From NCBI RefSeq assembly GCF_031769215.1, contig NW_026782072.1:1-64000 (forward strand): a stretch of 64,000 bases of DNA. The letters run 5' to 3'. The notes under the pieces were generated by a model. The model did not search any database. It was given only the letters and a program-made list of their open reading frames with translations, and was not told the DNA's origin. This DNA is from Ylistrum balloti. Its lineage: Eukaryota. The first letter of the stretch is position 1. Each line of letters opens with the position of its first letter. Position numbers and translations under genes: made by a program. Of this stretch, positions 1-29,164 are shown piece by piece.

Positions 1-450
1 GCCAGCTCCCAAGGCTTAGGTATGTCGAGATAGAACTTTATTACTTATTTGTAAAAACGAATTCAGCATTTAATTATTTGTCTTCGATATTCTTCTGATA
101 ATAATAACTTAGGTATGTTTCAAATTTAACAACATCCCTTAGCTCGGTATAGTTTGCAAAGGCAGATGATCTTATTTTGAAAACATAAATATGACGGTTC
201 CAAACCAGATTAATCCTTTATATTATCAATCATGAGCTTTATTGCTATCGATGTGTCTCACGTTTGAAAACAAATTATTTGATGAGATTTAATAGCCTTA
301 GCTTATATAAAAAGAACATGTCTACATATCATGTTATGAATTGGATTCTTACTAATGTATTATTGTAATTACATAGAAACGTTGACGGCAGTTTCTTACA
401 ATATAATATACAAATTGTTTAACTTGAGGTATGGTGTATTTACATTTCAG

Positions 451-3400
451 CGGCTAAAGGTACTACCTGTCCTGATGGAATATGCCAACTTGGACGCGAG
501 TGTGAGTGTGGCGACTCTTGTCAGTGCAGTGACGGGATGTCAGTGTCCTCAATGTAAAGCCGGATGCAAAAGTGCAGGTAGAGTGTCTCATTTGTTATGC
601 ACAGTTAGCTTTAATCAGGACAATAAAAAGAAACTCACACCAGGTAGTCTTTAATTACTAGAGACGGAAATTCTTCGATTGGTGAGAATTAGTTACTTGT
701 AACTGCGCATCCGGTAAATGTATGATTTTTTTGTTTTTTTTTTTTTAAATAGACTTATTTATACAGTTATTATCTTGCAAATATGTTAGAGTATCATAAA
801 GATCGAGTGCATATGAGGATAAGAAATTTCTAAATATTTGTAAATGAAATAATGATTTTTTTTTCACAAATAAGACAATTATTTCCCTTTTATGCATTTA
901 TTTCAATCAATTTACTACCGGGTAATCAAAACATCTGCCCCATTTCTAATATAGTATTCAAAGGTGTAACAGGATCATGCTGTTATACGGATGTTATAGT
1001 TTGATTGGTGACCTTTAACGTACTTGCCTGTTGTCTGATTTGTTCGACAATAACTATCTATATAATAACATAATATTTATAATTTGGTCAAATAAGGTAT
1101 TTATCGACCTTTTCGTCCATTAATTATTTTCTATATCTGCGTAATAGCTGTGTCAGACACAAGCTTTATTTGTTCACCTCCATTTTACTTTACTCTGTCT
1201 CCTTGTTTTCTCCCTTCTAATTCAATCATTGTTATCATTCTGAAGATTTTATTGATCAGAGACCGGATAGTTCAATTCTGCATTTGCTACTGTATTCTGC
1301 GTTATGATGGTAAACAATTTTATCAATGCTGTATTTGTACATAAGAATTTACTCTTATCAATGATGAAGCAATTTGATAAACAGACTACATTAACTAACG
1401 TTCCTGCATATTAACTTATTTCTCCTGTAGCCGTGTACTGCGCCAAGTGTCCTGGAGGGAAGTGTGGTTGTACTGGTGCAGACTGTTGTACCAAAAACTG
1501 TAGATGCCCCGGATGTAAGAGCGGATGTGGATGCTTCCGTGAGTTGCTATATGACATTAATATATACAATTTCTTCATTTTAAAAGATAATTATCGGTAG
1601 CATGGTTTATATTTGATAATAGTGTCTGAAGTTAATTCAATAACAATAAATATCTTATCCTTAATATAGATATTACGACAGTGTTCAAATTTCTCTAGTG
1701 TTTTTTCCATGTCAGGATAATGCGAGGATGTTTTATCACATATATACCGCTTTGTATAGATTTTGTAAAATGGAAATTCAGTCATGTTATCAATCACTAT
1801 TTATCAACTAAATTTTTGATAATCTTCTTTTCATATAGCGAAGAAAGGTGGCTTCTGTCCTGGTGGACAGTGTCAGGTCGGACGTGCGTGTGAGTGTGGA
1901 GATTTCTGCACGTGCAGTGACACTTGTGAATGCTCTGTCTGCAAGGCTTGCTGCAAGTGTGGAGGTAATGTTGTTTAATGGTAGTGTACACTTGTATTAA
2001 ATGTTAATGCTATCTTCACATTAGAGGTTTCCGTATCCGTTACACGACTAAGTAGCAGTAGGAACGAAAGGGATGGGACATTTTATAGCATACTCCTTGG
2101 CTGTGTTGCATATCATTTGATACTGCGAGTAGTAACATTGAAAAATTGAGGGGTTTGTCACTTGTTGCATATAAGGATTTCGGGTAGATATATACAAAGA
2201 CTTAGTTGTCAGTAGTGATAGTTTGGATCTCTCCCAACTGTATTCATTATAAAAATACATAAAGTCGACCAAAGTGGTTTGCAAATTAAAATTTCTCTAA
2301 GTCGGTTGGTAAGCTTGGTTGTTCTACAGATAAGATATAGAGGTACTCCTTTGCACATGTCCTCAGGTTGATATTTTAATGGGCGATAAATCTTACCAAC
2401 ATATCCATTCGCTGATTCTATTATTCTTACATCCCAGGTGCCAATGTTGTATGTTCTACGAACTGTCAATCAGGACAATGCTGTGAAACTAGTGCTTGTC
2501 AGGGCAGGTGCAAGTCGGCTACAGGTAAGTACTCTTATTATATTAGACGCCACAATTTGAAAACAACGAGTATATTTCTATTTCAATGCCATGATTTATC
2601 GAAGTATATTCGATCATTAAGATTCCATTCAACGTTCTGCCAACATCTTATTTCCTTCTAACATATTATATTGATTATATCATGTTAAACAAAGACAATA
2701 TGACTAAGAATGGTTACGCTACGAGTAACGAAATTGCTGTCGATTACCAGAATTTTGTTAATATTTACTTCTTTCACAGCTGTGTTCTGTGCCAAATGTC
2801 CCGGGAGGAGGTGTGGTTGTACTGGTGTGGATTGTTGTACGAGCAAGTGTAGATGCCTCGGATGTAAAGTCAACTGTAGATGTTTCTGTAAGTTGTGACA
2901 CCACTTAATTTCAATAATCATTTTGGTGAAAAGACTCTTCATACCCTCCTTTTTTGATAAGTCCATGATATTTTTCTGCAACTACGCCTTAATATCACTG
3001 GATATTTTATCAGACGTATGATCTTTTATTATTGTAATTTTAACTGATTACAGTGTAATAATAAATATTAAATAATATTATTCTAATTCAGCGGCTAAGC
3101 GAGCTACTTGCCAGGATGGAGCTTGCCACAAAGGGCGTGCATGTAGGTGTGGCTGCAAATGCAGTAGCGCATTCCAGTGTCCATCCGGCAAAGCTGGGTG
3201 CAAATGTGCAGGTAACATTGTTATATATTCATTTAGGTGATTTAAAATCGCTATTTGTTCCTTTCTGTTCTATGAAAATATACGTAGTTTTGATGAAACA
3301 CATATAAATCGTTATCAACAACAAAGTGTTCGACATACCTATAAAATGTGCCCCATGTTAATGTGTTTTAATATCCACTCTTTCAGACTGCAATTTCGTG

Positions 3401-5573
3401 TGTTCTGCAGAGTGTGGATCTAGGCAGTGTTGTGGAACAAGTGCATGTAAATGCAACGGCAAATGCGCATGCCAGAAGTGCAGATGCACCTGCGCATCTG
3501 GTAAGAATTTCAAATAGTGCATGTCAATAAAAACAAACAGAGTTTGTGCTGTTAAAACTGGATAAGAGTTGTATTTTTAAGCTTTCCTGAAGATGTTGTG
3601 TACAATATGATTTTAACAGCTGCACAACTACTTTAACTAAACTATTTGGCTCATCATGTCAGTTTTTTCCACAAAAACGGTGTGTGCTTTGTTTGTTTAT
3701 TGTTTTCCCCCCTCTTTTTAATTATAGATATACATCTAAATTTAATAGAAAGATCGCAGTAGTTTCCACGACTTCTATAGCCTGAAGATACACTGAACTG
3801 TAAAGGATGATCCTCGGTATTTGCTTTTTTACTAAGCTGTAAATTAATCACTTAGACTTAATACTTAAACCATATGTCTCATTTTAGGGAATTGCACTTG
3901 TAATAGAGGATGTACTGGACCCTGCACTTGTAAATGTGTTGCAGAGTGTGGATCTAGGCAGTGTTGTGGAACAAGTGCATGTAAATGCAACGGCACGTGC
4001 GCATGCCAGAAGTGCAGATGCAACTGCGCATCTGGTAAGCATTTCAAATATTGCATGTCAATAAAGACAAACAGATTTTGTGGTGTTAAAACTGGATAAG
4101 AGTTGTACTTTTTTTTGCTGAAGATTTTGTGTACAATATGATTTTAACAGCGGCACTACTACTTTAACTAAACTATTTGGCTCATCATGTCAGTTTTTTC
4201 CACAAAAACGGTTTGTGTTTTGTTTGTTTATTGTTTTCCCCCTTCTTTTTAATTATAGATATACATCTAAATTTAATAGAAAGATCGCAGTAGTTTCCAC
4301 GACTTATATCGCCTGAAGATACACTGAACTGTAAATGATGATCCTCGGTATTTGCTTTTTTACTAAGCTGTAAATTAATCACTTAGACATAATACTTAAA
4401 CCATATCTCTCATTCTAGGGAACTGCACTTGCGATAGGGGATGTACTGGACCCTGCACTTGTAGATGTGTTGCAGAGTGTGGATCCAGGCAGTGTTGTGA
4501 AACAAGTGCAAGTACATGCAACGGCAAGTGCGCATGCAACAAGTGCAGAAGCAACTGCGCATCTGGTAAGCATTTCAATTATTGCATGTCCATGAAGACA
4601 AACAGATTTGATGGTGTTAAAACTGGATAGGAGTTGTACTTTTTTGCTGAAGATGTTGTGTACAATATGATTTTAACAGCTACACTACTACTTTAACTAA
4701 ACTATTTGCCTCATCATGTCAGTTTTTTCCAAATAAACGGTTTATGTTTTGTCTGTTTTTTTTTTTGTTTTGTTTTGTTTTCCCCCTTCTTTTTAATTAC
4801 AGATATACGTTTAAATTTAATTAAAAGATCTCAGTAGTTTCCAAGACTTATATCGCCTGAAGATACACTGAACTGTAAATGATGATCCTCGGTATTTGCT
4901 TTTTACTAAGCTGTAAATTAATCACTTAGACATAATACTTTAACCATATCTCTTATTTTAGGGAACTGCACTTGCGATAGGGGATGTACTGGACCCTGCA
5001 CATGTAGATGTGTTGTAGAGTGTGGATCTAGGCTGTGTTGTGGAACAAGTGCATGTAAATGCAACGGCAAGTGCGCATGCAACAAGTGCAGATGCAACTG
5101 CGCATCTGGTAAGCATTTTAATTATTGCATGTCCATGAAGACAAACAGATTTGATGGTGTTAAAACTGGATAGGAGTTGTACTTTTTTTGCTGAAGATGT
5201 TGTGTACAATATGATTTTAACAGCTACACTACTACTAAAACTAAACTATTTGGCTCATCATGTCAGTTTTTCCCAAACGAACGGTTTATGTTTTGTTTGT
5301 CTGTTTTTTGTTTCTCCCCTTCTTTTTAATTATAGACATACATTTAAATTTAATAGAAAGATCGCAGTAGTTTCCACGACTTATATCGCCTGAAGATACA
5401 CTGAACTGTAAATTATGATCCTCGGTATTTGCTTTTATCATAAGTTGTAAATTAATCACTTAGACATAATACTTTAACCATATTCTTTCATTTTAGGGAA
5501 CTGCACTTGCGATAGGGGATGTACTGGACCCTGCACTTGTAGATGTGCTGCAGACTGCACATGTAAGCAGTAA
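451..5573 (+). CDS. MT: Giant multi-module metallothionein MT-A; 5' end lies upstream of the window; first visible exon is frameshifted (gene or pseudogene unresolved)
   Basis: AG/GT-bounded Cys-rich exons, all phase 1-1: 451-577 (type III, 127 nt, +1 G at 534-536), remnant of IV at ~693-713, 1431-1538 (II, AVYCAKCPGGKCGC..), 1839-1964 (III), 2438-2524 (IV, shortened to 87 nt), 2780-2887 (II), 3092-3211 (III), 3387-3500 (IV), 3888-4034, 4419-4565, 4962-5108 (147-nt chimeric V/IV), 5497-5573 (V, GNCTCDRGCTGPCTCRCAADCTCKQ-TAA). Exons from 1431 on splice into one open frame of ~393 codons with 115 Cys. AATAAA near 5788. Confidence 0.85.
3387..5573 (+). repeat. ~535-bp intragenic tandem repeat (exon + intron); four copies of the same intron
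   Basis: Donors at 3500/4034/4565/5108 and acceptors at 3888/4419/4962/5497 give periods of 531-543 bp. Intron text recurs nearly verbatim (e.g. gatcctcggtatttgc, gaagatacactgaactgtaaa). Confidence 0.95.
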
Positions 5574-6010
5574 GTGGTGACGTCATTGGATGGATAGTCC
5601 CACTTTTTCTCAGTTTCTGCGGACATCATTATTGACATTTACGTATTCAACGTGTTATTCAGAGTTTTATTTGTATTTAAACGGAAAGTATATTACCTGG
5701 TGATTTCAATGTAATCGTTCGCTTAACAATCAATTGTATTCCCAATCATTGTCATATCTCGAAGTTGTGTTATTACAGACGAATTTAAATAAAATATGGC
5801 TTCTACTTTTTCCGGTGTTGATAATTTATGTGTATGTTCTATACCCTGATTATCTCCTAATCCTTTTTACAGTAAGATCTATAGTCTTTACATGTTTAGA
5901 AACGATTGAAAATAGGCGCCTTCCTTTTATTTCCATTGTCTACGTACAAACCGACGACGTTTTAAGTAAAGACTTTATAATCAGCCATACCAACATCAAG
6001 AAACTGAGAC

Positions 6011-6205
6011 ATTGACTGGAAACCTGTAGTACCTGGTTATCTTCTCAATGGACATATTGACTGGCAACCTATAGTACCAAGTTATCTTCTCAATGGACAC
6101 ATTGACTAGTAACCTGTAGTACCAGGTTATCTTCTCAATGGACACATTGACTGGTTACCTGTAGTACCAGGCTATTTACTAGACTAGTTACTTGCAGTAC
6201 CAGGG
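6011..6205. repeat. 45-bp minisatellite, ~4 copies
   Basis: Unit attgactggaaacctgtagtacctggttatcttctcaatggacat, decaying at the right end. Confidence 0.85.
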
Positions 6206-6639
6206 TTGATACCCAAGGAAATTTCTATTTGAAAATTAGGAGGTGACTGCTGAAAATCTAATTTGACTGAGAGAAAGATCAAAGTCTAAATGGGGAGGTG
6301 ACTAGCCCAATAATGACATCTAGTTCATCATTTCCATATATATGATAACGTAAGGTGTATACAGAAATTAAGTTACCTAATCTACTTTCACAACACTTGT
6401 TGGGTATAACGGAAATATTAAAACGACTCAATATTTATTCAATATTTACTTGACTGACCTCAATATGAACATCTGAACTGATCTACTATATATGTTATAA
6501 CTGGTCAATAGCAATGAGAAATGCTTTACAATAATTGTTAACTGATTATTCTACCTGATATTCATCTGATTTTTCTTGTCCGCATGGAGTTTTATTGTCT
6601 GAGAAAAACCGAAGTATTAGAAGGAAAATTTACGTGGTC

Positions 6640-6727
6640 CCCACACTTTCCATGTTATGTCGTAGAATCGAACCCTAGACGTTTAGGTAAAATGAGCGTG
6701 TGTTGCCTTTGCACCACCCGATTATCC
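6640..6727 (-). mobile_element. Degenerate tRNA-derived SINE head (Pol III A/B boxes)
   Basis: Minus strand reads ggtggtgcaaaggcaac...gggttcgattctacg: A-box-like GGTGCAAAGG and B-box GGTTCGATTC at tRNA-like spacing, with no full cloverleaf. Confidence 0.4.
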
Positions 6728-8928
6728 AAAGCATTTTTCACATGTTTATTGGAATATTTGAACTGTAGCAATATGAAGAGAGACGCTATTGATACAGTGT
6801 TTCCTATTTCAAATCACATACATGAACTGGTGACATAATAAAAAATACATTCACAATCGTATATACCCATCATATTTATAAATCAATGAACAATGATTGA
6901 ATTTTCACTCTTGTGAATTTTCTATTTACTGATATTAATATCCTTTGTTCACCTAGGGTACATGTCATAGCTGAATGAATATTCAATGTCGTGTTCAAAA
7001 TATCACGATATTTGTGTAAGATGTCGACAACTGACAAATACACAACACCGGTTTCAACAGGTGCAGGCTGTTGAAGATAGTAAGTCTCGCGGTCATTACA
7101 AGGATTGCAATTCCGTTTTTGCTAACTTTGTTCTCTTTTTGAAATGTGACATATTTTGTTTTTCGGGAACACCTGCTCTTATTCTCCATGGTTTCCGTGC
7201 AAAGCTTGTTTTTGTTCAAGTTTTGCCTTAGTGTCATCGAATTTGAGATTGAGTTAAAATGATGTTAACATGTCTGTATTTTCTTTGCTTTTAGCATTAT
7301 TATTTATTTGATGCAGCACTTCTTAATGTCGCTTGACTTTAGAAAAAAATAGTTTATTCTATATTGAAACTGATGCATTCCTCTCTTGACATACATGTAT
7401 AACTGGTTACCTTGGGGCAGGTCATTTTTTATAGTAATATTCTGATCATAAATATATTGGCATCTAAAAAGAAAAAGCACTTGGTTACGTCGGAGTACAG
7501 TGTAAACAACATAATTGATGTTGAGTTTGAAAGTTACTTGTCTTTTTATTTTAAATGCAGGCAAACACATCAGTTATTTCAGTCAGTTGTCTTATTTTCT
7601 GCTTTCTGGCTGTAAGCAAAGGCACTTTGATGAGTATTACAAGATTATAAATGAATATGACGCGTTCTAGGAACTACACGTTTTCTGAATAATTTATACC
7701 TCAAGGGAAGTAACTCTTTACGACACGGTTTTTCCATGTGTGCACGAAAGCTCAGATTTTTTTTAAACTTAGTTACTCTGAAGTAGAAATATGGAAGAAT
7801 GGCCTTCCAAATAAACTAAATGTTGTAACCTTTTTGTTGTTCAAGAAAGAATTACAAGCATATATTTTGCTTTAGGTATGGAAAACGCCTCGTAGTCAAT
7901 ATTTGTACTCATTTTATCAGGTTTGTCTGTGTGTATTTTACAGAGTGCATGAAATGCAACTAAATGTTTCCTGAAACGTATACACATTTATTAGTTTCAA
8001 AATCTTGTAATTAGATTTTATGTATTCTTAAGTTTAATTATTTTATTAGTATATGGTTTTTATTAACATTGATTTATTTAATTTAAGGGTAATGTCATAG
8101 CGAACTATTCATATCATATAAATGGGTTAGGTATTATACTCCTAACAGAGAAGGTGTGTGTGCATATGTATGTGTTAACCATGATATCCAGCTGAGATAT
8201 ATAAATTGCCAACATTGTATCTAAAGGAAGCTGACTGATTGTTAGTATGTATCAACGTGGTGCAAGCAACTGAAATATGATTAAAAAACGATGATAATGT
8301 TGTTTATTTACAATGCCAAACATGGGTTATATATGTATATACAAGACTCGCTCGCAAACACATAATCACTCACTCCTATATCAAGAAATACGAATGTTAA
8401 TGTAGCTAAGCATAGATCCTGAATAATATTCTAATACACCTTAACTCATTAACAAGGATGTAAACACTCCACTCAAATATGTTTTAAATAGGTATTAATA
8501 ATGTATGGCTCGAGTTTAATTAGGAGATTACATTGAATTTCACACCTCATGGTTTCAATACATTTTCCACCCGCGCGCGTACCCACTGTGTTCAACACTA
8601 TGACAAAAGAGACGTTAAACGCACGATATAGACTACATAATTGCATATTGAACAATCAAGTATGCATTTATCGCCCTTATACAATAGTAGAACATACATA
8701 CTTTATGCATAAAAATTAGCATAAAAACGACATGAATAGAACTCATTTCACCTAAGTAATACACAATGATCTAGGTTGTTTGACCCGATGGTAACACTGT
8801 ACAATGCAATATCAACTAAAATAGAAAGTTAACTTACCACAGTCTGTCTTTTGTGCCTGTTTCACATGCTGTAAAATAGCGATAAATTCTTATTGGATGC
8901 ACGAGGCAAATAACAACAGCTCACCAAG

Positions 8929-9401
8929 TGCACGCCTGCCCGTGACGCATTTCCACCGATGCCTAATTATTAAGGTTACTTACCTCGGCAGTGATAAAAA
9001 CAAAATACACAATCAATTCAATATACATGTACTATCAACAATAAACGTGCTTGCGTGGTAGTATATCTGTGTATAACTTATCCTTTAAGGGGACCATTTG
9101 AAAGATTAGTATAGTTGCTACCCTCGAAAAAATTATTATCATGTATGTGCATAAATTGTGTAGACAATGTGGATGTATTTTACATTGTAGACGTAAATAG
9201 TATTGTGTCAATTATCAGAAAGATAAACAGAAAAATATGGCATACCTTTGATTGACCTTCACATAGTAATACTTTGTTTGAACGACCTCTGAAATGACGG
9301 TTTTGGTCTAAATTAGGTAGAATACCAACAGGAGAGTCGTCATGTTATTTTCTTTGAGATTTCGTATCTCAAGTGATAACATCCAGACCATAGGATTGAT
9401 G

Positions 9402-9448
<47 letters not shown>

Positions 9449-9675
9449 AGTCACGCCTAGTAATTGGAGGCTGAATATATACGTCACTTAGAAATAAAGA
9501 TATGATACATACATAATCAACTAAGCATCGTGTGCAAAATTCCCTTCTTACATTCTTTTGATTTGCACACGATACGGTTTTGCATACGGCTGCCTTCACA
9601 TGTATTTTGTACGATTCACGTATACCTCCTTTAATGCACACGATTTTGGTTTGCTCACGCAATGTCCCTATAACT
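8929..9675 (+). promoter_or_regulatory. MT-B promoter: metal-response elements and a TATA-like box
   Basis: MRE core TGCRCNC at 8929-8935 (TGCACGC), 9530-9536 (minus strand), 9564-9570 and 9635-9641 (TGCACAC). cctataac at ~9667, ~85 bp upstream of ATGTCCGAAG. Confidence 0.7.
9404..9445. repeat. (TA)n microsatellite, ~21 units
   Basis: Direct reading. Confidence 0.98.
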
Positions 9676-9755
9676 AGCGTCATATTTTTTTATCAATAAT
9701 GAGCTGAAGAGACACATTCAGTCGTTTTCAGAGCGTTGAAAACTTTCCTCATGAG

Positions 9756-11470
9756 ATGTCCGAAGGCATATATTATTCGTTTATTATAAATCAGTTAAAT
9801 AAATATATCATTTCATTTATCTTTTTATCTATTTTTGTTTAATTTTTTTATTATTTATTTAAATAAATTAGACAATTATCGGTGATTAGTATTTCTATGT
9901 TCACATATGGCCTTGGATTTGGTGTAGAATTTTCCTTAAATTTCAGTGACTTCTAAACTGCCTGTCTGCATCAGAGACATCATACAAGTAATGAACACTT
10001 TGGTTGCAAACAGTTTAGATCAATAAACTGAACTGGATTTTTGGTAAAATGACCATTGCAAATAACTAATATTTTTAGTTAAATGTAGTCGGTATTACCG
10101 TGTTAAGAGTACCCGATTGGCCATTACAGAAATGAATTAAATAAAGACCTGGGTTCTTTCCTTATATCATAAACGTATGTAATATTTTATTATTATTATC
10201 TTAATAATCATAATTATCATAATCAAAGTCTAGCATTATGTATTAATCTGCCTCTTCCTTTTGATTATTGGTCTTATTCCTCTATCATATTTTAATTTAG
10301 CTTCCAGAAGTATGTACTCCTTCTGTTCCAAAATGTACATTAATGGATATTTATAAAATTAATTTGTTTAAAACGGCTATTTTTTCCGTTATCCTGCACT
10401 TCACTTCACTTAAAATGACAGAGCAATCCGTTTAATTAATTTGTTCTAAAATTACTTTTTTCTTGAGTGGGTGGTAATTATAAATATGGATCCATTACAC
10501 AAATTATATCAGGTACGGAAACAGAATTTAGAGGAGAAAATATTTACAAATTTAGGTTTTTATTTCGTATTCAGTCGTGTTCTTTGCCAAGTGTCCCGCT
10601 GGAAGGTGTGACTGTACTGGTGCGGGCTGCTGCACCAACAACTGTAGATGTCCCGGTTGTAAGGTCGACTGTGGATGTTTCTGTAAGTTGGAAACAAAAT
10701 TCAAAAATTCAAAATTAAAAACAAATTTTCTCTTGTATTTGCTAAAGAACCAGTCTGATACTTTGGAAAGTATACTTAAACTTTAATGACAAGACGTTGA
10801 TGGCTGTGATCTTACTTGATTCTGAAGATGAAAGCATTACACCATCATGTCAATAACACTGGACAACAAATTATATTGAAACCAATTAAATAAATTACTA
10901 TGTAGCACATGTATATTTATAGTATAAATTGTATCTTTGGTTAAGTCGCGAGGGCTGCTACCTGTCCTGACGGAATCTGTCATATGGGAGTTGCTTGTAT
11001 ATTAGTATCAATAATCCGCTTTTGAGTTAGTGACAAACCTTGTCGATACACCATTATTTAACCTGTTATATATCGATACCAATAGATCAAAAATATTTTA
11101 AATGTTCATTTTATTTTAACGAACAGGTAGAAGTATAATGATGGTGTACTTTTGATAATAATGTACATTTCTTCACGTCTTTAGTACATCGCTGATTAAA
11201 ATCGTTGTGTATCAAAGAAAAAGATATATTTCAAAATGAAAACCCATATAAAAATAACTAATCTTGTTCGAGTATTGACTAAATTTACCAATATAAAAGC
11301 TACTTCTCATGTTTTCTTTGTCAGGGGCTAACTTAGTGTGTTCCGCGGACTGCCAGTCTGGGAGGTGTTGCGGTACTAACGCCTGCCATTGCAGTGGTTG
11401 GTGTGGATGTCCAACGTGCATAGGCAGCTAGAACTTGTAGGTGTTCTGCAGCTGTTCGTGTAAGTAGTAA
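9756..11470 (+). pseudogene. MT: Metallothionein pseudogene MT-B
   Basis: Exon I ATGTCCGAAG 9756-9765 is followed by GCATAT instead of GTAAGT. Exon II 10575-10682 (first Cys->Phe). Exon III is truncated (10946-~10998, ..TCPDGICHMGVAC, no donor). Exon IV starts at 11325 and hits TAG at 11429-11431, then fuses to a frameshifted remnant of the exon V end (acttgtaggtgttctgcag-ctgttcgtgtaagtagtaa, 11433-11470). Confidence 0.85.
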
Positions 11471-14400
11471 GCGGCTACGTAATCGAAAATCCAATTCCGA
11501 TCTTGGATGGAATGTCCTACACTGCTCTCTAACTGCCTGTTGACAAATTGATAGATACAATTAAATTATTTTGTTGATTCAAAGAGCTTTATATATTTTT
11601 CAAGCTGTCTTAAAACTTTATTAACTTTATTTTATTAACAACTAGATCTACATTTATATTATAAATAATTTCTGTTCTCTTATTCCTAACATATTTTCAG
11701 GATGTAAAAGTAATAAATATGAAAAAAAGCATAAAATTTTGAGTTTTGCTGTATACTTATGAACCATGGATTTGATAACAAATAGTATGCTAAAACAACA
11801 AAGAAAATACGCACATTTCAACAGAGCCTTAAGTCGTGAAATTATGACAAAATATGACCAAAAGAAAGATTTACACGCAGATCGAAGAAGTGAACTTTTA
11901 GCGGGGCAAAGACTAATGATGTTTGTTAACGAATAGCTCAATCTCAATACCGAATCATAATCAAAAACATGCAATATCTGGCATTGAGTGCCAAGCTAGG
12001 GCTTTGCAAAAGATATGTGTCAATCATATCATATACCAAACCTCCATTAATATTAGGTGGAATGAAGGCTTAGAAGTCAATAAAAATTACAGAAAGCGTT
12101 TTTTTCGAGGTGCGAGAAGGACACAATGGAGTGCAATAAGATCTTAAATCTTGGAAATTATACTTTTTACGATCAAGACAATTGATAGTTGAACTTTGAT
12201 AGTATAGTGGTTTTTTTCCATGTTCAATAGTTTACAAAACTTTGTGGTACAAACATATTCAGTTTCGGTAAAACATAGTTCTAGCAATTGATACACATTA
12301 ATTGTGTGTCCCCAATGTTCGACCCGCTGCCAAAAAGTGTTTATTACTCATGAAGATATTACAACCTTTGTTTGCACTGTGACATTAGTAATAAAAGACC
12401 TTTGCATGTGATGCAAATTGATTCCAAAGCATCCATGATCATTTATTTTCATCGAATAAATTACGTAGAAAATAATAACCAAATTATCCTTTTCAATGTA
12501 GTATCTCTCAGCATGATTGATATAAATTATAAATACACTTACATATGTAAAACAGAAACAAGAGAACAGAATTTTAATTCAAAGCACATATCGATGGACA
12601 GGGTAAAAATAAGAACAACAACAAAAATACACGAAGACGCTATAAAAGGAACCATTCTATGTTCAAATATCATTAAAAGGACAAACAAATGAATCCCACA
12701 TTTTAATGAAATTCAGAGTTAGATACAGTGGATCCAAATAATGAACAAAACAGCATTATAGGGTTGTTTCATGCTTCTTTGACTTTTGAGTTATGCTAAG
12801 GGTCCAAGTTTGGAAGTCTAGATGGCGACTGAGAAAAATCCAAAGTGACCTAAAGTAGTCAAAATGTCGACGGGGAGGTACTCTAGCCTCATAAGACAAT
12901 ATATTTCGTAATTCTCATTTATCTAATTTTAGAAGAACATCAAATACATGTGTATATTCTGAACAGTGCCACAAATCGATTGAATTAAAACTGGGCATAC
13001 AGTTGAGGACTAATAGTCCTCTAGCAATGTCTACCACATGCAATCTCGAAGATTGTACCAAAGACACAAAAATTAATGGCACATTTTAATAAAATTTAGA
13101 GTTAGATGCTGTAGAGTTGCATATGGTCTGTAAAACCTCAAACGTAGGACGTTCCAATATTCAGTTAGTGTAAAGATTCTAATTGAACCACAATATTAAT
13201 TTGATTTTCATCAAATTGCCTTATTGGCAAGCCGGGTTTCAATTTGATTAACCATCTACTGCAATACAGTACATCAAAGCGAAACGATACAATATACTGT
13301 ACATGTGGATACTTGTAATTATGCTGTTAAAATAATCCGTAGTTACATATCAGCTACATCGAAGTAGGTACTGAAGAAAATCAAAATTTGTCGAAAGAAA
13401 TCTTAAGATTTAGATGGAGAGGTGCACTAACTCCATAATTCAATAACTTTGATAATATTCTCATCTCGAATGATTTGATAGGAACGTCAAGCACGCGTGC
13501 ATATTCTGACCGTATTACTCTTCATATCAAAACATGTCATACAAGTTACAGTGGGGTGTTCTCTGAATGTAAACATTTTTATACAAGAATGTGTTGCTTT
13601 ATGATACAATGGCAAGTCAATTATATACTGTTTCATATAGGATGTATTTCTTCACCTGGATTGTTACCTGATATTTACCGGTTCCTCACAAAACATTTCT
13701 TCATATTTGATGTATTACAATTTTAAAAAAACATTGAAATGTTGTTATCAAAGCAATTTAGATGTATGAAAAATGTTGATATAAAAATGTGAATAATTAA
13801 ATTTGACAATTCAGCACTAAATTATATTTGAAAACATCGAACTATTATATTGGATGATACCGTTATATACAACACACTATAAATTTAATTGTTTTTTTTA
13901 TTATTATTATTATTTAAAATAAGTCATTGAATCAAAGAAAAAAGCGCATAATAATGTTGTAGGCTACAAGCACGCATACCGGTAATAATACTGAACGTCA
14001 AGACTTGTACGTATTGTAATTATATCCAACAAAAAGAGGATGACTTACATATTTAATCATAATTCAAAATTTAGGAGTTACTGTTAGGTTTTTAAATAAT
14101 TTACCATGCTACATGGTTGATCGAGAACTTGACATAAGCAATTCCACTTTTAAATGATACAAAAAACAGGAAAATTGAATAATTGATTAAGATTCTAAAG
14201 AAAGACGGCATACTGTTATAATTTATAATGAAGTATTTATATATGATTAAATAAAATTTTAGTGTTCAAAAAATTTCGGTTCCATAGAAATATTTTTAAA
14301 TAAAATTGTCTGGTATATGCAGGATTTTCAATTTTGAGAAAGTACAATAGATAAAACTTGGTAAGCAGATATTACATTTCGATTTTACATAAATTGAATA

Positions 14401-15394
14401 GCGATTTTTTTTAATTTTTCGATATCAGTTTGCTTTAGATTACATGAAAACGCATTGTGATTTTAAAAAGATACTTTGATACTATTAAATAATCACACAA
14501 GAAACTTACTTTGTATTTAGAGCAAGTAACCATTAATTCATAGTGGAAACTGGCAAACGGAATGATGCAGGATACCAAAATAAAATTGTCTTCATTTTTA
14601 ATCAAATGACATATATGTCCAAATATATCAAGTTGAAAGCTAATGTCAGTTATCAGCTGAACATAAGAAAATTATGAAAATACCACTAGATATGTCCAAA
14701 TGCAATTAAGTTGATAAAACTCAGGAATTTCAACCATAACAAAACCTTAAAATAATGATAGAACATGAGATGTGAAATGATGCATTTGATTTCTCTTTAT
14801 TTCATATGGCGAAAAAGAACAAAAGTATTCATTTTTTAACATATATCCGAGATATTTAGGTAACACCAATAAAAAAGTATCTCAGGTTGTGAACGTTACG
14901 GTATTATGTGATTAGTCCTCCAAAAATAATTATCACTTTCAAGAACACATTATTGATGGACATCTCAACAGTAAGAGAATGTATCAATAGATTATCAAAA
15001 CATCATCTGCATGGAAAGAGAAGTCATTTCACTCTCTCTGTCCTTATTCTTAGATATAATAGTAACGGTTCATAGTTGTAACAAGCAACAGTAATATTGA
15101 AACATAGTATTACATTTCCAAAATACACAATATAAGGAAATTATAACTTTATATCACAACATATACTAGATAATACGAAAATAGAGATCCGCTTTGTTGT
15201 ATGATTAAAGTTGAACATTAATTTTAAAACATCAGAGTCGGTAGTTGAAGACAAAAAAAATATCTTTATTGATATCTGGCGAGATTGCATAAGCCTTACA
15301 AAGTTACAGCTGATGATGAAAAAGTATATGACATTTATGTAGAATGTCATTACCGGGAATATACACACACTATATTTTAACAGTACATATATGT

Positions 15395-16215
15395 TGCACA
15401 CGAACATGTAATGAGTGCACACGATGATACACAAGCATCACTGCACACGGTTGATTTTGTATTACGTATAAACAAAATACATATCTATTTTTAAAAAAAA
15501 ACAATCGTGCTATCTCCTATTGTTTCTATCTCTGAAATAGGTTGTAACAGACAAAGATTGTATAATTATCCATCAGGAAGTATTGACATGACAGGGGATT
15601 ACATCTTTTGGGTGTGTTTACATATTCGGAAAACATATGCGTCTTAGCTTACGTCATTTATACCGACATAATGAAATGTTGCATTCAGTCTAATCATGTC
15701 GAGTTACATATCAGTCACTCCAACAAAGTTGACAATAAACACGTTGTAACATTAAGTATGTGGTGTTACAGGCAAACGTACAAATCTCTAAATGATCATC
15801 CCGAAAAAAGTCAGTATGATACTTCCTTATATATCTACTGTAGTTCACGTCGTCGCTTAATAATTTGATAATCTGTAACACTCCTGGTTCATTTAATATC
15901 TACTATATTTTTTTTATATTCTATTGTAAGTGGTTGACTTGATAATGACTACCTTTTATATATCTATGATCGAGCTCTAAAATTAGTAATCACATATTTT
16001 ACTTGGCAACGAATGTAATTAACGTAAGTATAACACTCCTATTGCAGTTATAATAATTTCCTTGTCATCGCTGCACACCACCCTGGTTTTGCTAAGGGCT
16101 ATCTTCACATAAATATTTTGCGCGTGGTTCTACCTATTCATGTCAATTCACACGATACTTAGTTTGCACACGCATCGTCCCATTTTTGCACACGCATCGT
16201 CCCATTTCCTATAAG
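15395..16215 (+). promoter_or_regulatory. MT-C promoter: distal and proximal MRE clusters plus TATA box
   Basis: TGCACAC at 15395, 15416, 15442 (distal) and 16072, 16165, 16187 (proximal). TATAAG at 16210-16215. Confidence 0.85.
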
Positions 16216-16336
16216 TATTGTCACATTTTGCAATTGGACAATACCCTGACAATTGATCTATCCAGTAGCGCTGAGAAGATTTTCCGGTTCTGAAGGTACT
16301 CTATAGAAGATCTGAAGGTACTCTATCGAAGCCGAA

Positions 16337-18444
16337 ATGTCTGAAGGTAAGTAGAGTGTTTATGTCATGATTACGAACGGTTTCATGTTAGTGTTAAAGT
16401 AAATAACATATTAAATTGGTAGCTCTTACCATTGTTTTGGAAAGTACAAAACGTAAGAATATAAGTACGTTTGATAATATAATTTCCAAAAATCGTATTT
16501 CCTCGTATTGAGACCAAAACTTGTAGTTGAAATTCATCGGTTGTTCGCTTAAATCTAGGAGTTGAAATTTTGTGATACCTAATTTTTGTAAGTACTTCTC
16601 CCGTTTGATTTTTTCACACATTTTTGACATTGATAACCGCATGGTAGTGGTAGGTAGCTATTTTTACTTTGCCTGTCTGCAATTATCATTGTAGATAAAC
16701 AGGTAGTTGATTGCTGATGGGCCATCCGTCTCAGATATAAACCCCAATTTTCACCGAAAACTGATTTTATTTCCGTTTTCAGCATTCCACTATATTTGGT
16801 GATCTTTTTTCAGAATGCTTTCGAACAATAAGACATCGACTTTTCTTTTACGTCTTATAAGAACCCTCGAAGAGTACTGAACGATCGATATGATCATACG
16901 GTGCGGTGAAGATGTTTCTACATCTTAATGAAATGTGGAGTATAAAATATTCAGTAAGGGTAGTTAAACATATTAGTAGTATCTGACGACATGGGGATTT
17001 CTGTTCAATAGTCTATTGAAAAAGAAACATTTTCCTACCCAACAGTTGCGTTCTGTGCCAAGTGTCCTGGTGGACAGTGCGGCTGCACAGGTGCTGGATG
17101 CTGTACTACGAGCTGTAGATGCCCCGGATGTAAAGTAAACTGTGGATGTTTCTGTAAGTTAAAAGTGAATAGTCTTTTATAATAGGACAGTGGAGGTTTC
17201 ATGAAATACCGACGCTAAGAATAACAGGAACTGCAATCCTACAAAACATTTAAAATTCTAATTGTGCTTTTCTGTGTTACTTGCTTGTTGTATTTGTAAC
17301 AACGTTGGGGCGATATAGATCTGTACTATGGATACTGTTCAGTTAGATCACTTTGTGATATCATGGTGACAAAAAAGTATCTGTCACTGTCCAAGGCGCT
17401 GGGAACAAGCTGAAGGATACATATATCACGTTAATACTGAAGAGGACTTAAACTGATTTACAATACTTTATGTTTCTAATTTAGCGGCAAAGGCCTCAGT
17501 TTGTCCCGACGGAATCTGTCAGATGGGAGTTGATTGTGAATGTGGCTGCAAGTGCAGCAGCGCATGTACGTGTCCCAACTGCAAGGCCGGATGCAAATGT
17601 GCAGGTAAGTACATTTAACTTCCTTCGCATATAATCATAATCATAGTTGTCAGAGTTACCTTTCTCGCTTTATATTGTCAGTTATACTCCGTTATACCAT
17701 AAAGGATTGGAAGGAATCCATCAGATTTTATCTGGTTAGTCTAGAAAACATTTTGTTATAAAAGTGAAGCTTTTATGTGTAGAGTTTATTTTTGTATATT
17801 TTACTGACAACTTGATTTCATTTCAATTCATTTCACAAATAAATAAGGAACATTATACATGTACAAATAGTAATAAATGTATTGCCTATAATGTCTCAAC
17901 TTTTACTTGGTGGTACTATTTCTTGTTTGTCAGGTGCCAACTTCGTGTGTACCGCGGACTGCCAGTCTGGGATGTGTTGCGGTACCAGGGCCTGTCAGTG
18001 TAGCGGCAAGTGCGCATGTCCAAAATGCAAGTGCAACTGTGCCTCTGGTAAGTACCGGAGTTCTTAGGAACAGGACCTGTCATTGGCTGTTACATAATAC
18101 CCTATTTATTTAAGGCAAATAGCATGAAGAGTACAAATTCCTGAGAACTTCAGTTGGTACAATGATCCAAGAGTCATGTAATATATCTGGATATATTACT
18201 CCGTTGTTTAAAGTTGTATATCTATAGAAGTTACAGTTAAACACAAAAAAAAATTTCAGTATTCAAAAGTGCTTAAGTTATATCTTTACAGGATAAATTT
18301 GAAAAACATGTGAAATTTTCTCGTCAGTTTTTGATATCGTTATTTATCAATCAATCATACCTTACAGGGGCATGTGCGTGCGGTGTGGGCTGTACCGGAC
18401 CTAAAACATGCAGGTGTGGTGCTGGATGTAGGTGTAAGCTGTGA
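16337..18444 (+). CDS. MT: Metallothionein MT-C, 142 aa, 40 Cys, 5 exons
   Basis: Exons 16337-16346, 17046-17153, 17485-17604, 17934-18047, 18368-18444 (429 nt, open, TGA). Protein: MSEVAFCAKCPGGQCGCTGAGCCTTSCRCPGCKVNCGCFSAKASVCPDGICQMGVDCECGCKCSSACTCPNCKAGCKCAGANFVCTADCQSGMCCGTRACQCSGKCACPKCKCNCASGACACGVGCTGPKTCRCGAGCRCKL. AATAAA at 18693. Confidence 0.95.
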
Positions 18445-21400
18445 AAAATCACATCTTTGGAGAATATGACACCATACCGGATGGACTGACCAATTCTTTA
18501 TCAACTCTTTACGGATATATTGATTAACATTTAAATTTGAAACTCCTGCTTGAATCCCTCGTTTTGTGATTGTCAATGACTTTATTTTGGTTATTTTACA
18601 CACAATTATCTTATTCTAATATAAAATGATTGTTGACAATTGTCATCTTGTTCTCTATCCTTTGGAAATCTTTGAAATGTAAATCTAATAACAATAAATA
18701 TTGGTATCTGCTTCAATGAGAGTTTTGTAGATTTATTTATGGACATGATGTTATTTTTGTCTTTAACCTCTGAATCCTGCAGGACTAATAGATTGGTCGA
18801 AAGAAATGTTTAGATTTAGATGGCGAGGTGCACTAACTCCATAATTCAATAACTTTGATAATATTCATATCTCGCATGGTTTGATAGGAATGTCAAACAC
18901 GCGTGCATATTCTGACCGTACTACTCTTCATATCAAAACATGTCATACAAGTTACAGTTGGGTGTTCTCTGAATGTCAATAAAAGAAGAATGTGTTGTTT
19001 TATGATACAATGGCAAGTCAATTCACCTGGATTGTTACCTGATATTTACCCGTTCCTCACAAAACATTTTTTTATATTTGATGTATGACAATTTTTAAAA
19101 AACATTGAAATGTTGTTATTAAAGTAATTTAGATGTATGAAAAATGTTATTATAAAAATTGGAATAAAGAACTTTGACAGTTCAGCACTAAATTATATTC
19201 GAAAAACAATTTACTATTAAATTGGATGATACAGTAATATGCAACACAAAGAAAGACTATAAACTGATGTTTTTTCTCTAGAATAAGGGAACAAAAGTAA
19301 TTGAAACAAAAAAAAGCGCATAATAATGTTGTTGGTTACAAGCACGCATACCGGTAATAATACTGAACGTCAAGACTTGTACGTATTGTAATTATATCCA
19401 ACAAAAAGAGGATGACTTATATATCTAATTATAATTCAAAATTTAGGAGTTACTGTTAGGTTTTAAAATAATATACCACGCTCCATGGTTTATCGAGAAC
19501 ACGACATAAGCAATTCCACTTTTAAATGATACAAAAACAAAAAACAGGAAAATTGAATAATTGGTGAAGATTCTAAAGAAAGACGCCGCACAGTTATAAT
19601 GCATAATTAATTATTTATATATATCATTAAATAAAATTTAGTAGTCCCATATTTTGGTTTCATACAAAATACTTTATAAAAATATATATTAAATAGTTTT
19701 TAAAAAGATATATTAAATATTTTTTTAAATAATAAGTGAATTTGGTCTGATGTATGTAGGATTCTCAATTTTGAGAAAATATCGTACTTCGGTGATTAGA
19801 ACTTGCTAAGCAGATTTCAGTTTTACAAATATAGAATAGCGATATTTTTCTATATCACTTTGCTATATTCTATATTAAAACCTATTATAATTTCTTAAAA
19901 TTACTATTAAATGATCACACAAAAAACTTATTTTGTACTTAGTAACCATTAATTCATAGTGGAAACTGGCAAACGGAATGATGCAGGATACCAAAATAAA
20001 ATTGTCCTCATTTTTATTATAATGCCATAGATGTCCCAAATATATCAAGCTGAAAGCTAATGTCAGTTATCAGCTGAACATAAGAAAATTATCAAAATAC
20101 CATTAAATATCTCCAAATGCAATTAAGTTGATAAAACTCAGGAATCTCAGTCATAATAGAACCTTAAAATAATTCAGCAACGTATGATATGATAGAACAT
20201 GGGATGTGAAATGATGCATTAGGTTCCTCTATATTTTTCATGGTGAAAGAGAACAATTTTTTTTTACATATATCCGAGATATTTAGGTAAGGTTATTGAA
20301 CAATTATTATAATGGAAATCAGCATTGGAAATTTATTTATAAACAATTATTTGAAATCTGATAAAATCAATCAATCAAATAATATTTACGAAGTCAAAAT
20401 TTGATTTTAAGTTTTAAAGGTAAACTTAACTGCTGGAATGGAAACTAATTAAGGGAAAAGATTATAATCCCTGTCAAAACTAATTGCCCTGTAGGGAAAT
20501 TCCAAATGCTGGCTTTCAGAGATACTCCTCAAACCTGGGGAACCACTAGGAGAGTCTCCGACATGAAGTCTCAAAAATTTGGAACCACCTTATATAACTA
20601 CTTAACCTATACTGAGAGCTTGAGATGTCTTATCTGTTGAAGGCCGAAGGCGGAGTGGATGTGAAATAAATACGTATATGAATAAAAAAGAACAAAGCAT
20701 GTCCTATGGAAATAAAACAGAGCGTTTTAAAGTGTCAGAACATTACACTATATTGCGAGTGTTGTCCTGTTATCATCTATCTTATATTTCAAATACAGAT
20801 CTACAACAATCCATTTTTCTTGTTTCACCAATAGCTGAAATTGCATCAATAAATAACTGTTAACAAGACGAAATAAAATACACAAAGCACAGTTCAAAGC
20901 ATGGAATGATGGGTGATTTCTGTTCTTAAGTGTGTATATAGAATATACTTTATATAATTACTAATTCACTGTATAATCATCCCGTGTTCGTGATATAACA
21001 GTCTTGCCAACATGAATCCCCATAACAATACAATGACATTGCAATTATGTACCTTTAACCATATTAAAGGATGCTCGTTTGCAATAATCAAGGGAAGTGA
21101 TTAATGCTCTTGGCAACTGATGTGCTAGTGATCAAAACATTGCGTGCCAATATTACTGTACTTAGGTCTCTGGTTCGGTGACTATGCTCATATGAATTTG
21201 GCTGTGAAAAAAACTGTCAAAATCTGCTAATCGAGTCCTTAATTTCTCAGGTACCTATTTTAATGTTGTATTACCATATGACACTTGGATAAAATAAATT
21301 TAAAATACCTATAAATGTCAACAGGTTGTGAACATTACGGTATCATGTGATAAGTCCTCCAAAAATAACGATCACTTTCAAGAACACATTATTGATGGAC

Positions 21401-21845
21401 ATCTCAACAGTAAGAGAATGTATCAATAGATTATCAAAATATCATCTGCATGGAAAGAGAAGTCATTTCACTCTCTCTGTCCTTATTCTTAGATATAATA
21501 GTAATGGTTAATAGTTGTAACAAGCAACAGTAATATTGAAACATAGTATAACATTTCTAAAACACACAATATAAGGAAATTATAACTTCATACCACAACA
21601 TATACTAGATAATACGAAAATAGAGATCGTCAGACCCGCTTTGTTGTATGATAAACGGTGAACATTAATTTTAAAAATTCACTGTCGGTAGTTGAAGACA
21701 AAAACATACATTTATTGATATATGGCAGTTGTTTCGGCAAGATTGTATAAGCCTTGAAACTAATGATGAAAAAAGCAAATGACATTTATGTAGAATGTCT
21801 TTATCGGGATTATACACACACTATAGTTTAACAGTACATATATGT

Positions 21846-22644
21846 TGCACACGAACATGTAATGAGTGCACACGATGATACACAAGCATCACTGCACACG
21901 GTTGATTTTGTATTACGTATTAACAAAGTACATATCTATTTTTTAACAAAAACAATCGTGCTATATCCTATTGTTTCTATCTCTAAAGTATGTTGTTACA
22001 GACAAAGATGGTATAATTTTCCTCCATCAGGAAGTATTAACATGACAGGGTTTTATCTTTTGGGTGTGTTTACATATTCGGAAAAAATATGCGTCTTAGA
22101 TCACGTCATTTATACCGATATAATGAAATGCTGCATTCAGTCTAATCATGTCGAGTTACATATCAGTCACTCCAACAAAGTTGACAATAAACACGTTGTA
22201 ACATTAAGTCTGTGGTGTTACAGGCAAACGTACAAATCTCTAAATGATCATCCCGAGAAAAGTCAATATGATACTTCCTTATACATCTATTGTAGTTCAC
22301 GCCGCCGCTTAATAATTTGATAATCTGTAATATTCCTGATTCATTTAAAATCTACTTTATTTTCTATATTCTATTGTAAGTGGTTGACTTGATAATGACT
22401 ACCTTGTATATATCTATGATCGAGCTCTAAAATGTAGTAATCACATATTTTACTTGGCAATGCATGTAATTAACGTAAGCATATCACTCCGAGTGCAGTT
22501 CCTATAATTTCCTTGTCATCGTTGCACACCACCCTGGTTTTGCTATGGGCTATCTTCACATAAATATTTTGCGCGTGGGTCTACCCATTCATGTCGATTC
22601 ACACGATACTTAGTTTGCACACGTATCGTCCTATTTCCTATAAG
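21846..22644 (+). promoter_or_regulatory. MT-D promoter: MRE clusters plus TATA box
   Basis: TGCACAC at 21846, 21867, 21893, 22523, 22616. Minus-strand TGCACTC at 22491-22497. TATAAG at 22639-22644. Confidence 0.85.
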
Positions 22645-22765
22645 TATTGTCACATTTTGCAATTGGACAATACCCTGACAATTGATCTATCCAGTAGTGC
22701 TGAGAAGATTTTCTGGTTCTGAAGGTACTCTATAGAAGGTCTGAAGGTACTCTATCGAAGCCGAA

Positions 22766-27800: not shown

Positions 27801-28244
27801 TCTCAACAGTAAGAGAATGTATCAATAGATTATCAAAACATCATCTGCATGGAAAGAGAAGTCATTTCACTCTCTCTGTCCTTATTCTTAGATATAATAG
27901 TAATGGTTAATAGTTGTAACAAGCAACAGTAATATTGAAACATAGTATAACATTTCTAAAACACACAATATAAGGAAATTATAACTTCATACCACAACAT
28001 ATACTAGATAATACGAAAATAGAGATCGTCAGACCCGCTTTGTTGTATGATAAAAGGTGAACATTAATTTTAAAAATTCACTGTCGGTAGTTGAAGACAA
28101 AAACATACATTTATTGATATATGGCAGTTGTTTCGGCAAGATTGTATAAGCCTTGAAACTAATGATGAAAAAAGCAAATGACATTTATGTAGAATGTCTT
28201 TATCGGGATTATACACACACTATAGTTTAACAGTACATATATGT

Positions 28245-29043: not shown

Positions 29044-29164
29044 TATTGTCACATTTTGCAATTGGACAATACCCTGACAATTGATCTATCCAGTAGTGCT
29101 GAGAAGATTTTCTGGTTCTGAAGGTACTCTATAGAAGGTCTGAAGGTACTCTATCGAAACCGAA

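What the first reader, a model, noticed from the sequence alone, without database searches (positions are those of the whole stretch)
3888..5108. Chimeric V/IV exon removes the stop codon and creates an expandable 49-aa, 16-Cys module
Seen: each 147-nt exon starts as terminal exon V (GNCTCxRGCTGPCTCxC) and switches to exon IV (AECGSRQCCGTSAC...CNCAS) with the exon IV donor. The switch falls in a shared stretch, exon IV tgttctgcagagtg versus exon V tgtgctgcagactg. Inference: one unequal crossover at this microhomology produced a stop-less phase 1-1 unit that can then expand or contract like an accordion. The unit joins the first part of the terminal beta-type domain to the second part of an internal domain, giving a Cys spacing absent from MT-C/D/E (16, 14 and 16 Cys in the three copies). 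This is a visible route to de novo MT domain creation.
Basis: partly seen in the sequence, partly recalled or inferred. Interest (0 to 1): 0.85.

Follow-up and report, generated by a model that had tools for sequence, protein, structure and literature searches.

The report
Hybrid-exon repeat in scallop metallothionein gene
A large metal-binding (metallothionein) gene of a probable scallop carries three in-frame copies of a hybrid exon, made when the front of its last exon was joined to the back of the exon before it and the piece was then copied; it is a clear base-level example of how such proteins lengthen, but nothing here shows the exons are expressed.

Summary
Window 3407-5548 is a four-unit tandem array (units of 531-543 bp, 5-11% diverged). 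It carries three 147-nt phase 1-1 exons at 3888-4034, 4419-4565 and 4962-5108. Each starts like terminal exon V (46-51 of 51 nt) and ends like exon IV (86-92 of 96 nt). Each keeps exon V's acceptor, exon IV's donor and a full copy of intron IV.

They also share a C>T change there, so the hybrid arose once and was then copied. The spliced frame stays open for 392 codons with 115 Cys.

"One recombination at a microhomology, then expansion" is well supported. Crossover and replication slippage cannot be told apart. "De novo domain" overstates it: the module rejoins two existing domain parts and keeps a nearly complete beta1-type pattern.

Function is unproven:
- No start exon or metal-responsive promoter lies in the window.
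- An upstream exon is frameshifted.
- Copy 2 lost two Cys.
- Substitutions among the copies do not differ from neutral.
- No database protein or paper matched.

Repeat-domain metallothioneins are known, so this is a new variant of a known kind.

The parts
3387..3500 (+). Exon IV of the large metallothionein gene (114 nt, phase 1-1); parent of the 3' part of the hybrid exons
   Evidence: AG/GT borders and Cys-rich frame. Homologous to exon IV of MT-C at 73%.
3401..3414 (+). Exon IV side of the junction stretch, TGTTCTGCAGAGTG
   Evidence: Unique match in the window. Lies within the 41-nt in-frame similarity 3388-3428 to exon V 5531-5571.
3407..3940 (+). Repeat unit U0: 3' part of exon IV, intron IV, and the 5' (exon V-type) part of hybrid exon 1
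   Evidence: Anchors and four-unit alignment.
3888..4034 (+). Hybrid V/IV exon 1 (147 nt, 16 Cys)
3941..4471 (+). Repeat unit U1 (531 bp)
   Evidence: Only 4 private substitutions.
4419..4565 (+). Hybrid V/IV exon 2 (147 nt, 14 Cys; two Cys-to-Ser changes and one Gly-to-Glu)
4472..5014 (+). Repeat unit U2 (543 bp; T-rich insertion in the intron)
4962..5108 (+). Hybrid V/IV exon 3 (147 nt, 16 Cys)
5015..5548 (+). Repeat unit U3, ending inside terminal exon V
5497..5573 (+). Terminal exon V (stop TAA at 5571-5573); parent of the 5' part of the hybrid exons. Junction stretch TGTGCTGCAGACTG at 5544-5557.
   Evidence: AATAAA at 5788, 215 nt after the stop.
2780..3211 (+). Exons II (2780-2887) and III (3092-3211) of the same block, in frame with exon IV and the hybrids
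   Evidence: Spliced frame is open. pN/pS against MT-C is 0.2-0.33.
1431..2524 (+). Upstream block of exons II' (1431-1538), III' (1839-1964) and IV' (2438-2524), in frame with the rest
   Evidence: 392-codon open spliced frame with 115 Cys.

Best explanation
Shown: the last two coding exons of a multi-exon, mollusc-type metallothionein gene underwent one tandem duplication. Its breakpoints lay inside exon IV and inside terminal exon V. The ends joined in a 7-nt identity, CTGCAGA, which sits in a 41-nt stretch where the two exons are 68% identical because both encode Cys-x3-Cys-x3-Cys in the same frame. The duplicated piece ran from the 3' part of exon IV through intron IV to the 5' part of exon V. 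The result was a new internal exon with exon V's acceptor, exon IV's donor and no stop codon: 147 nt, phase 1-1. Two further duplications of the roughly 535-bp unit raised it to three copies.

Inferred: because each copy is flanked by full copies of the donor and acceptor pair that already worked in the parent gene, all three should be spliced in by default. Skipping any of them would keep the frame. They would add 147 residues and 46 Cys to a protein of at least 392 residues (about 40 kDa, 29% Cys) that binds Cd, Zn or Cu in thiolate clusters.

I rate the structural history as near certain and present-day expression and function as roughly even odds.
For: - Mosaic identities and unique junction strings.
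- Full-length homology of the four introns, with the outer flanks not repeated.
- The same junction plus a shared C>T change in all three copies.
- All variable sites fit one tree, ((U0,U1),(U2,U3)); no abab or abba patterns occur.
- The exon IV / exon V similarity beats about 99% of codon shuffles and is absent from MT-C.
- The spliced frame is open for 392 codons with canonical AG/GT at every border.
- Older paralogous exons show purifying selection, with pN/pS 0.21-0.37 at pS 0.44-0.83.
- The published beta1 Cys pattern is met at the C-terminus of this gene and of MT-C/D/E (pattern from PMC7826182).
- A polyadenylation signal lies 215 nt after the stop.
- The same locus holds a second, gene-scale hybrid of the same topology: MT-D is 5' MT-E and 3' MT-C.
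Against: - No start exon like ATGTCTGAAG|GT (found for MT-C/D/E), and no other phase-1 ATG exon, lies upstream in the window.
- No cluster of TGCRCNC metal-response cores lies upstream of the gene, whereas MT-C/D/E each have two clusters.
- The first exon of the gene visible in the window (about 453-585) is frameshifted.
- Hybrid copy 2 lost two Cys.
- The exon IV-type parts diverge as fast as the introns, with about 10 nonsynonymous to 2 synonymous changes.
- No protein in three large-database searches and no Pfam family matched the module, so there is no transcript or orthologue evidence.
- Unit U1 has far fewer private changes than the others (4 against 15-23; p = 3e-4). A simple stepwise history does not explain this.
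Confidence: 0.8

Rival explanations
1. The array is real, but the large gene is dead or dying. The hybrid exons would then be neutral by-products of a recombination-prone repeat and make no protein.
For: - No start exon or metal-response cluster in the window.
- Frameshifted upstream exon and a 21-nt exon IV remnant at 693-713.
- Two Cys lost in copy 2.
- Nonsynonymous to synonymous counts among the copies do not differ from neutral, p = 0.17.
- All protein searches blank.
Against: - The 392-codon frame is open across 10 exons, with every splice site intact.
- The older blocks differ at pS 0.44 yet keep every Cys of exon II, with pN/pS 0.37.
- The exon V-type parts show fewer nonsynonymous changes than neutral (p = 0.04, few sites).
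- The 5' end may simply lie before window position 1.
- Short Cys-rich genes are often left out of annotation, so blank searches weigh little.
Confidence: 0.35
2. The extra units are an assembly artefact, with a single IV-intron-V stretch wrongly expanded.
For: Tandem repeats are error-prone in assemblies. U1 looks consensus-like, with only 4 private changes.
Against: - The units differ by 5-11%, with many unit-specific substitutions and indels.
- The V/IV junction cannot be produced by mis-stacking reads of an unduplicated gene.
- There are no N runs in the window.
Confidence: 0.03
3. The three hybrids arose by separate recombination events between exons IV and V, or by gene conversion, and not from one founder.
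For: The in-frame similarity between exons IV and V could favour recurrent exchange at the same place.
Against: - All three have the identical junction and share a C>T change found in neither parent.
- Their flanking introns are copies of one another.
- The site patterns fit one tree.
Confidence: 0.04

Closest known systems
Oikopleura dioica OdiMT2 (repeat units of a trimmed 12-Cys domain plus a full 12-Cys domain; 3-7 units among populations; PMC8283569)
   Same: A large metallothionein built by internal tandem duplication. Its repeat unit joins a truncated domain to another domain. Unit number changes by recombination.
   Different: It is a chordate with unrelated Cys motifs. Its variation was shown across populations and its units were tested for metal binding. 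Here only one genome is seen, the breakpoints are mapped inside two exons, and nothing is known of expression.
Oyster multi-domain metallothioneins (Crassostrea gigas CgMT2 by exon duplication; C. virginica forms by exon and gene duplication; PMC4101491 and PMC5578137)
   Same: Bivalve metallothioneins lengthened by duplication of internal exons.
   Different: As those papers describe them, whole exons or domains are copied. Here the unit starts and ends inside exons, so the copied exon is a hybrid of two different exons.
Scallop AirMT1 and AirMT2 of Argopecten irradians (beta2-like domains followed by beta1; PMC7826182)
   Same: MT-C/D/E in this window (142 aa, 40 Cys, three N-terminal Cys modules and a C-terminal beta1 pattern) fit the layout described for AirMT1. 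The large gene is a paralogue of them.
   Different: I could not obtain the AirMT sequences, so this rests on the published description only. No scallop metallothionein with hybrid repeat units was found in the papers searched.
Alinda biplicata AbiMT4 and its engineered variants (PMC11645667)
   Same: [quoted passage not shown] That makes it plausible that a rearranged array still binds metal.
   Different: Those variants shuffle whole domains. Here partial domains are fused.
Hybrid elements made by unequal crossover between tandem neighbours (textbook anti-Lepore topology)
   Same: The new element has the 5' part of the downstream parent and the 3' part of the upstream parent, and lies between them. 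MT-D in this window shows the same topology at gene scale.
   Different: The exon-level event used only 7 nt of identity, whereas classical cases use long homology.

Membership tests
Mollusc metallothioneins (C-terminal beta1 type) | High Cys content (about 15-30%) arranged in CxC and CC motifs | tested here: met
   115 Cys in 392 residues (29.3%). MT-C/D/E have 28.2%.
Mollusc metallothioneins (C-terminal beta1 type) | C-terminal 9-Cys beta1 pattern, [CxC]x3-6[CxC]x3Cx5[CxC]x3-5[CxC] (PMC7826182) | tested here: met
   The regular expression matches only at the C-terminus of the large gene (positions 361/363) and of MT-C/D/E (111/113).
Mollusc metallothioneins (C-terminal beta1 type) | Profile match to a curated metallothionein family | tested here: inconclusive
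   Pfam gave no hit for any single exon translation. The pieces are 24-48 aa, and HMMER may discount Cys-rich matches (my inference). The spliced protein could not be submitted by reference.
Mollusc metallothioneins (C-terminal beta1 type) | Metal-responsive promoter (clusters of the MTF-1 core TGCRCNC) | tested here: inconclusive
   Clusters lie upstream of exon 1 of MT-C/D/E. None lies upstream of the large gene in the window, whose 5' end seems to lie beyond position 1.
Mollusc metallothioneins (C-terminal beta1 type) | Binds Cd, Zn or Cu in thiolate clusters | not testable with these tools
   Needs recombinant expression and metal analysis.
Domain-repeat (multi-modular) metallothioneins | Tandem Cys-rich units within one open reading frame | tested here: met
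   Three 49-codon units in frame between exon IV and exon V.
Domain-repeat (multi-modular) metallothioneins | The repeat unit equals one or more complete domains | tested here: not met
   The unit is the 5' part of exon V joined to the 3' part of exon IV. The full beta1 pattern is not met inside the repeats, and the pattern CxCxCx3Cx4CC is new.
Domain-repeat (multi-modular) metallothioneins | The repeats are present in the mature transcript or protein | not testable with these tools
   No transcript data. Protein databases gave nothing.
Tandem duplication with a hybrid junction element | The hybrid has the 5' part of the downstream parent and the 3' part of the upstream parent; the sequence between is duplicated; the outer flanks are not | tested here: met
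Tandem duplication with a hybrid junction element | One junction shared by all copies (single origin) | tested here: met
   Same junction and shared C>T change. One tree fits all sites.

The most novel reading that the evidence does not exclude
The 49-residue hybrid module is expressed and folds into a metal-thiolate cluster of its own, unlike that of either parent domain. Its copy number varies among scallops as a tunable cadmium store. The resulting protein of about 40 kDa or more, not found in any protein database searched here, could account for part of the high-molecular-weight (35-66 kDa) Cd-binding fraction reported in scallop midgut gland (PMC12357810). A peptide search would miss it if its sequence is absent from the reference proteome.
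Probability: 0.12. Interest if true: 0.7.

Novelty: new variant of a known kind. Interest (0 to 1): 0.45.

Why it matters
Metallothioneins are a standard model for how repeat proteins and new domains arise, but the DNA events behind domain repeats are rarely visible. Here both breakpoints, the short identity used and the later copies can all be read directly.

The locus also suggests a general rule. The regular spacing of Cys codons gives different metallothionein exons short in-frame similarities. Illegitimate joins between them therefore tend to keep both the reading frame and the Cys lattice, even where exon borders and domain borders do not coincide.

If the gene is expressed, it would be among the largest animal metallothioneins described in the papers read here. 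It would also be a candidate for the unusual cadmium retention of scallops.

Tried and rejected
Searches that came back blank:
- Word-index protein searches with the 48-aa module and with an 83-aa stop-free stretch around hybrid 3.
- A full HMMER scan of 1.84 billion representative proteins.
- Pfam on nine exon translations.
- A neighbouring 228-aa ORF, tried in order to name the species.
- Peptide strings in the paper library; the only hits were to the one string that also reads as DNA.
- Supplementary files of PMC7826182, which are not held.
- Rfam on window 1-12000.

Weak results: the solved-structure search gave one chance hit at E = 0.25. The ESM Atlas gave only metallothionein-like neighbours at 0.85, below its own reliability line.

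Readings I rejected:
- U1 as a simple U0/U2 recombinant. The two site patterns interleave about 17 times in the first 345 columns.
- The intron as a dispersed repeat. It matches only its own four copies in the window.
- An internal start exon. No phase-1 ATG exon with a good donor lies in 1-2779.

Full report
**What is in the window**

The window holds a cluster of Cys-rich genes on the + strand.
- Each has five coding exons.
- Exon 1 is ATGTCTGAAG followed by GTAAGT.
- Each encodes 142 residues with 40 Cys.
- Their C-termini meet the beta1 Cys pattern published for mollusc metallothioneins (pattern from PMC7826182; test).
- Each has two clusters of the metal-response core TGCRCNC upstream of exon 1. 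The window holds 45 such cores against 22 expected.

Their layout of three N-terminal Cys modules plus beta1 fits what that paper describes for the scallop proteins AirMT1 and AirMT2. I could not compare sequences. Notes of other agents in this scan call the genome a scallop; I did not verify this.

**The large gene**

Upstream of the three genes lies a much longer gene. From 1431 to 5573, ten exons with canonical AG/GT borders, all internal ones in phase 1-1, splice into one open frame of 392 codons.
- It has 115 Cys (29.3%) and a predicted mass of about 40 kDa, and it contains no Met.
- Exon order is II', III', IV', then II, III, IV, then three 147-nt exons, then V.
- Its exons are old paralogues of the MT-C exons: pS is 0.6-0.8 with pN/pS about 0.2-0.33. 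The two copies of exon II inside the gene differ at pS 0.44 with pN/pS 0.37 and keep every Cys. The gene was therefore under coding constraint for most of its history.

The three 147-nt exons are 3888-4034, 4419-4565 and 4962-5108.
- Their first 51 nt match terminal exon V at 46-51 of 51.
- Their last 96 nt match exon IV at 86-92 of 96.
- The reciprocal comparisons are at background level.

In the alignment of the four units, the sequence upstream of the junction in exon IV (intron III and the start of exon IV) has no counterpart in the later units. The end of exon V (last Cys motif, stop, 3' UTR) has no counterpart in the earlier ones. Everything between is repeated, including the whole 387-bp intron at 85-94% identity. 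The intron matches nothing else in the window.

**The junction**

Exon IV reads TGTTCTGCAGAGTG at 3401 and exon V reads TGTGCTGCAGACTG at 5544, each once in the window. The hybrids read TGTGTTGCAGAGTG, with one further change in copy 3.
- The hybrid has the exon V base at the first mismatch and the exon IV base at the second. The join therefore lies in the 7-nt identity CTGCAGA.
- All three hybrids share a T where both parents have C. That change predates the amplification of the hybrid.
- The identity sits in a longer ungapped, in-frame similarity: 3388-3428 against 5531-5571, 28 of 41. Only about 1% of codon shuffles reach this, and it is absent between exons IV and V of MT-C.
- I attribute the similarity to both exons encoding Cys-x3-Cys-x3-Cys at that point, so that Cys codons line up. 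That is inference.

**History of the units**

The units are U0 3407-3940, U1 3941-4471, U2 4472-5014 and U3 5015-5548.
- Every variable column is either private to one unit, or separates U0 from the rest, or groups U0 and U1 against U2 and U3. No conflicting pattern occurs. One founding duplication plus two further unit duplications suffice.

Two things do not fit a simple clock-like history.
- U1 has 4 private substitutions against 15, 18 and 23 in the others. Relative-rate tests give p = 3e-4 and 2e-5.
- The sites grouping U0 with U1 are almost all in the first 345 columns (Fisher p = 0.03).

Exchange among units is a likely cause, but I could not fit a specific scenario. U1 is not a simple two-parent recombinant.

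The same window shows that the locus recombines at a larger scale. MT-D is 97-100% identical to MT-E up to about 23476, and 99-100% identical to MT-C from about 23676. That is the same topology as the exon hybrid: the 5' part of the downstream parent joined to the 3' part of the upstream parent, sitting between them.

**Is the module a new domain?**

However, the first CxC of the beta1 pattern is encoded at the end of exon IV. Each 49-residue period therefore still contains the beta1-type pattern lacking only its last Cys, followed by the rest of the exon IV module. This is a rejoining of existing parts, not origin from non-coding sequence. Whether it forms its own cluster cannot be judged from sequence.

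**Is it in use?**

For:
- The long frame is intact.
- Every donor and acceptor is intact, and each is a copy of the pair used by the parent intron.
- A polyadenylation signal lies 215 nt after the stop, similar to 249 nt in MT-C.
- The exon V-type parts have fewer nonsynonymous changes than neutral (3 of 7, p = 0.04).

Against:
- Overall, the mapped changes are 13 nonsynonymous to 6 synonymous, not different from neutral (p = 0.17).
- The exon IV-type parts look neutral (10 to 2) and diverge as fast as the introns.
- Copy 2 lost two Cys.
- No start exon and no metal-response cluster lie upstream in the window.
- The first exon visible (about 453-585) carries a frameshift and is followed by only a 21-nt remnant of an exon IV.

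The true 5' end probably lies before window position 1. A transcript from there would have to skip the damaged exon. No database protein, Pfam family or paper matched the module, so there is no outside evidence either way.

**Comparison with what is known**

- Internal duplication producing long metallothioneins is established in oysters, snails, scallops and Oikopleura.
- In Oikopleura the repeat unit also pairs a trimmed domain with a full one, and its number varies among populations.
- Engineered rearrangements of a ten-domain snail protein remain functional.

What differs here is that the unit begins and ends inside two different exons, that the breakpoints and the short identity used are still readable, and that exon and domain borders are offset.

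I class it as a new variant of a known kind. The interest is moderate: a clear mechanism, nothing surprising in principle, and no evidence of expression.

Noticed in passing
window 21750-25000 (MT-D) compared with 15300-18600 (MT-C) and 28150-31400 (MT-E): MT-D is a clean mosaic. It is 97-100% identical to MT-E up to about 23476 and 99-100% identical to MT-C from about 23676. This is what unequal crossover between MT-E and MT-C would leave between them.
   Followed up: yes
window 15395-15448, 16072-16193; 21846-21899, 22491-22622; 28245-28298, 28890-29021: Paired clusters of the metal-response core TGCRCNC (mostly TGCACAC) lie about 150-270 and 900-940 bp upstream of exon 1 of MT-C, MT-D and MT-E. 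The small minus-strand 'Cys-rich ORFs' at 15380-15484, 21831-21935 and 28230-28334 overlap the distal clusters and may reflect them rather than coding sequence.
   Followed up: partly
window 453-585 and 693-713: A decayed exon block lies at the start of the large gene. An exon III-type exon needs a +1 shift near 533-536 to keep its Cys frame and has its last Cys replaced by Ser. A 21-nt remnant of the end of an exon IV, with its donor, follows.
   Followed up: partly
window 7738-11428: A further metallothionein-like gene fragment has an exon II-type exon at 10572-10689, a 36-nt exon III remnant at 10963-10998 and an exon IV-type exon at 11314-11420. Seven TGCRCNC cores lie at 7738-9641. No exon 1 or exon V match was found, so it is probably a pseudogene.
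   Followed up: partly
window 3941-4471 (unit U1): U1 has only 4 private substitutions against 15-23 in the other three units (relative-rate p = 3e-4 or lower). No simple duplication order or single recombination explains this.
   Followed up: partly
window 6009-6175: A 45-bp tandem repeat of 3.7 copies at 89% identity lies about 440 bp downstream of the stop codon of the large gene.
   Followed up: no
window 55747-56199 (+): This ORF has a HYR domain match (Pfam PF02494, E = 3.5e-6), probably one exon of an unrelated extracellular protein gene.
   Followed up: no
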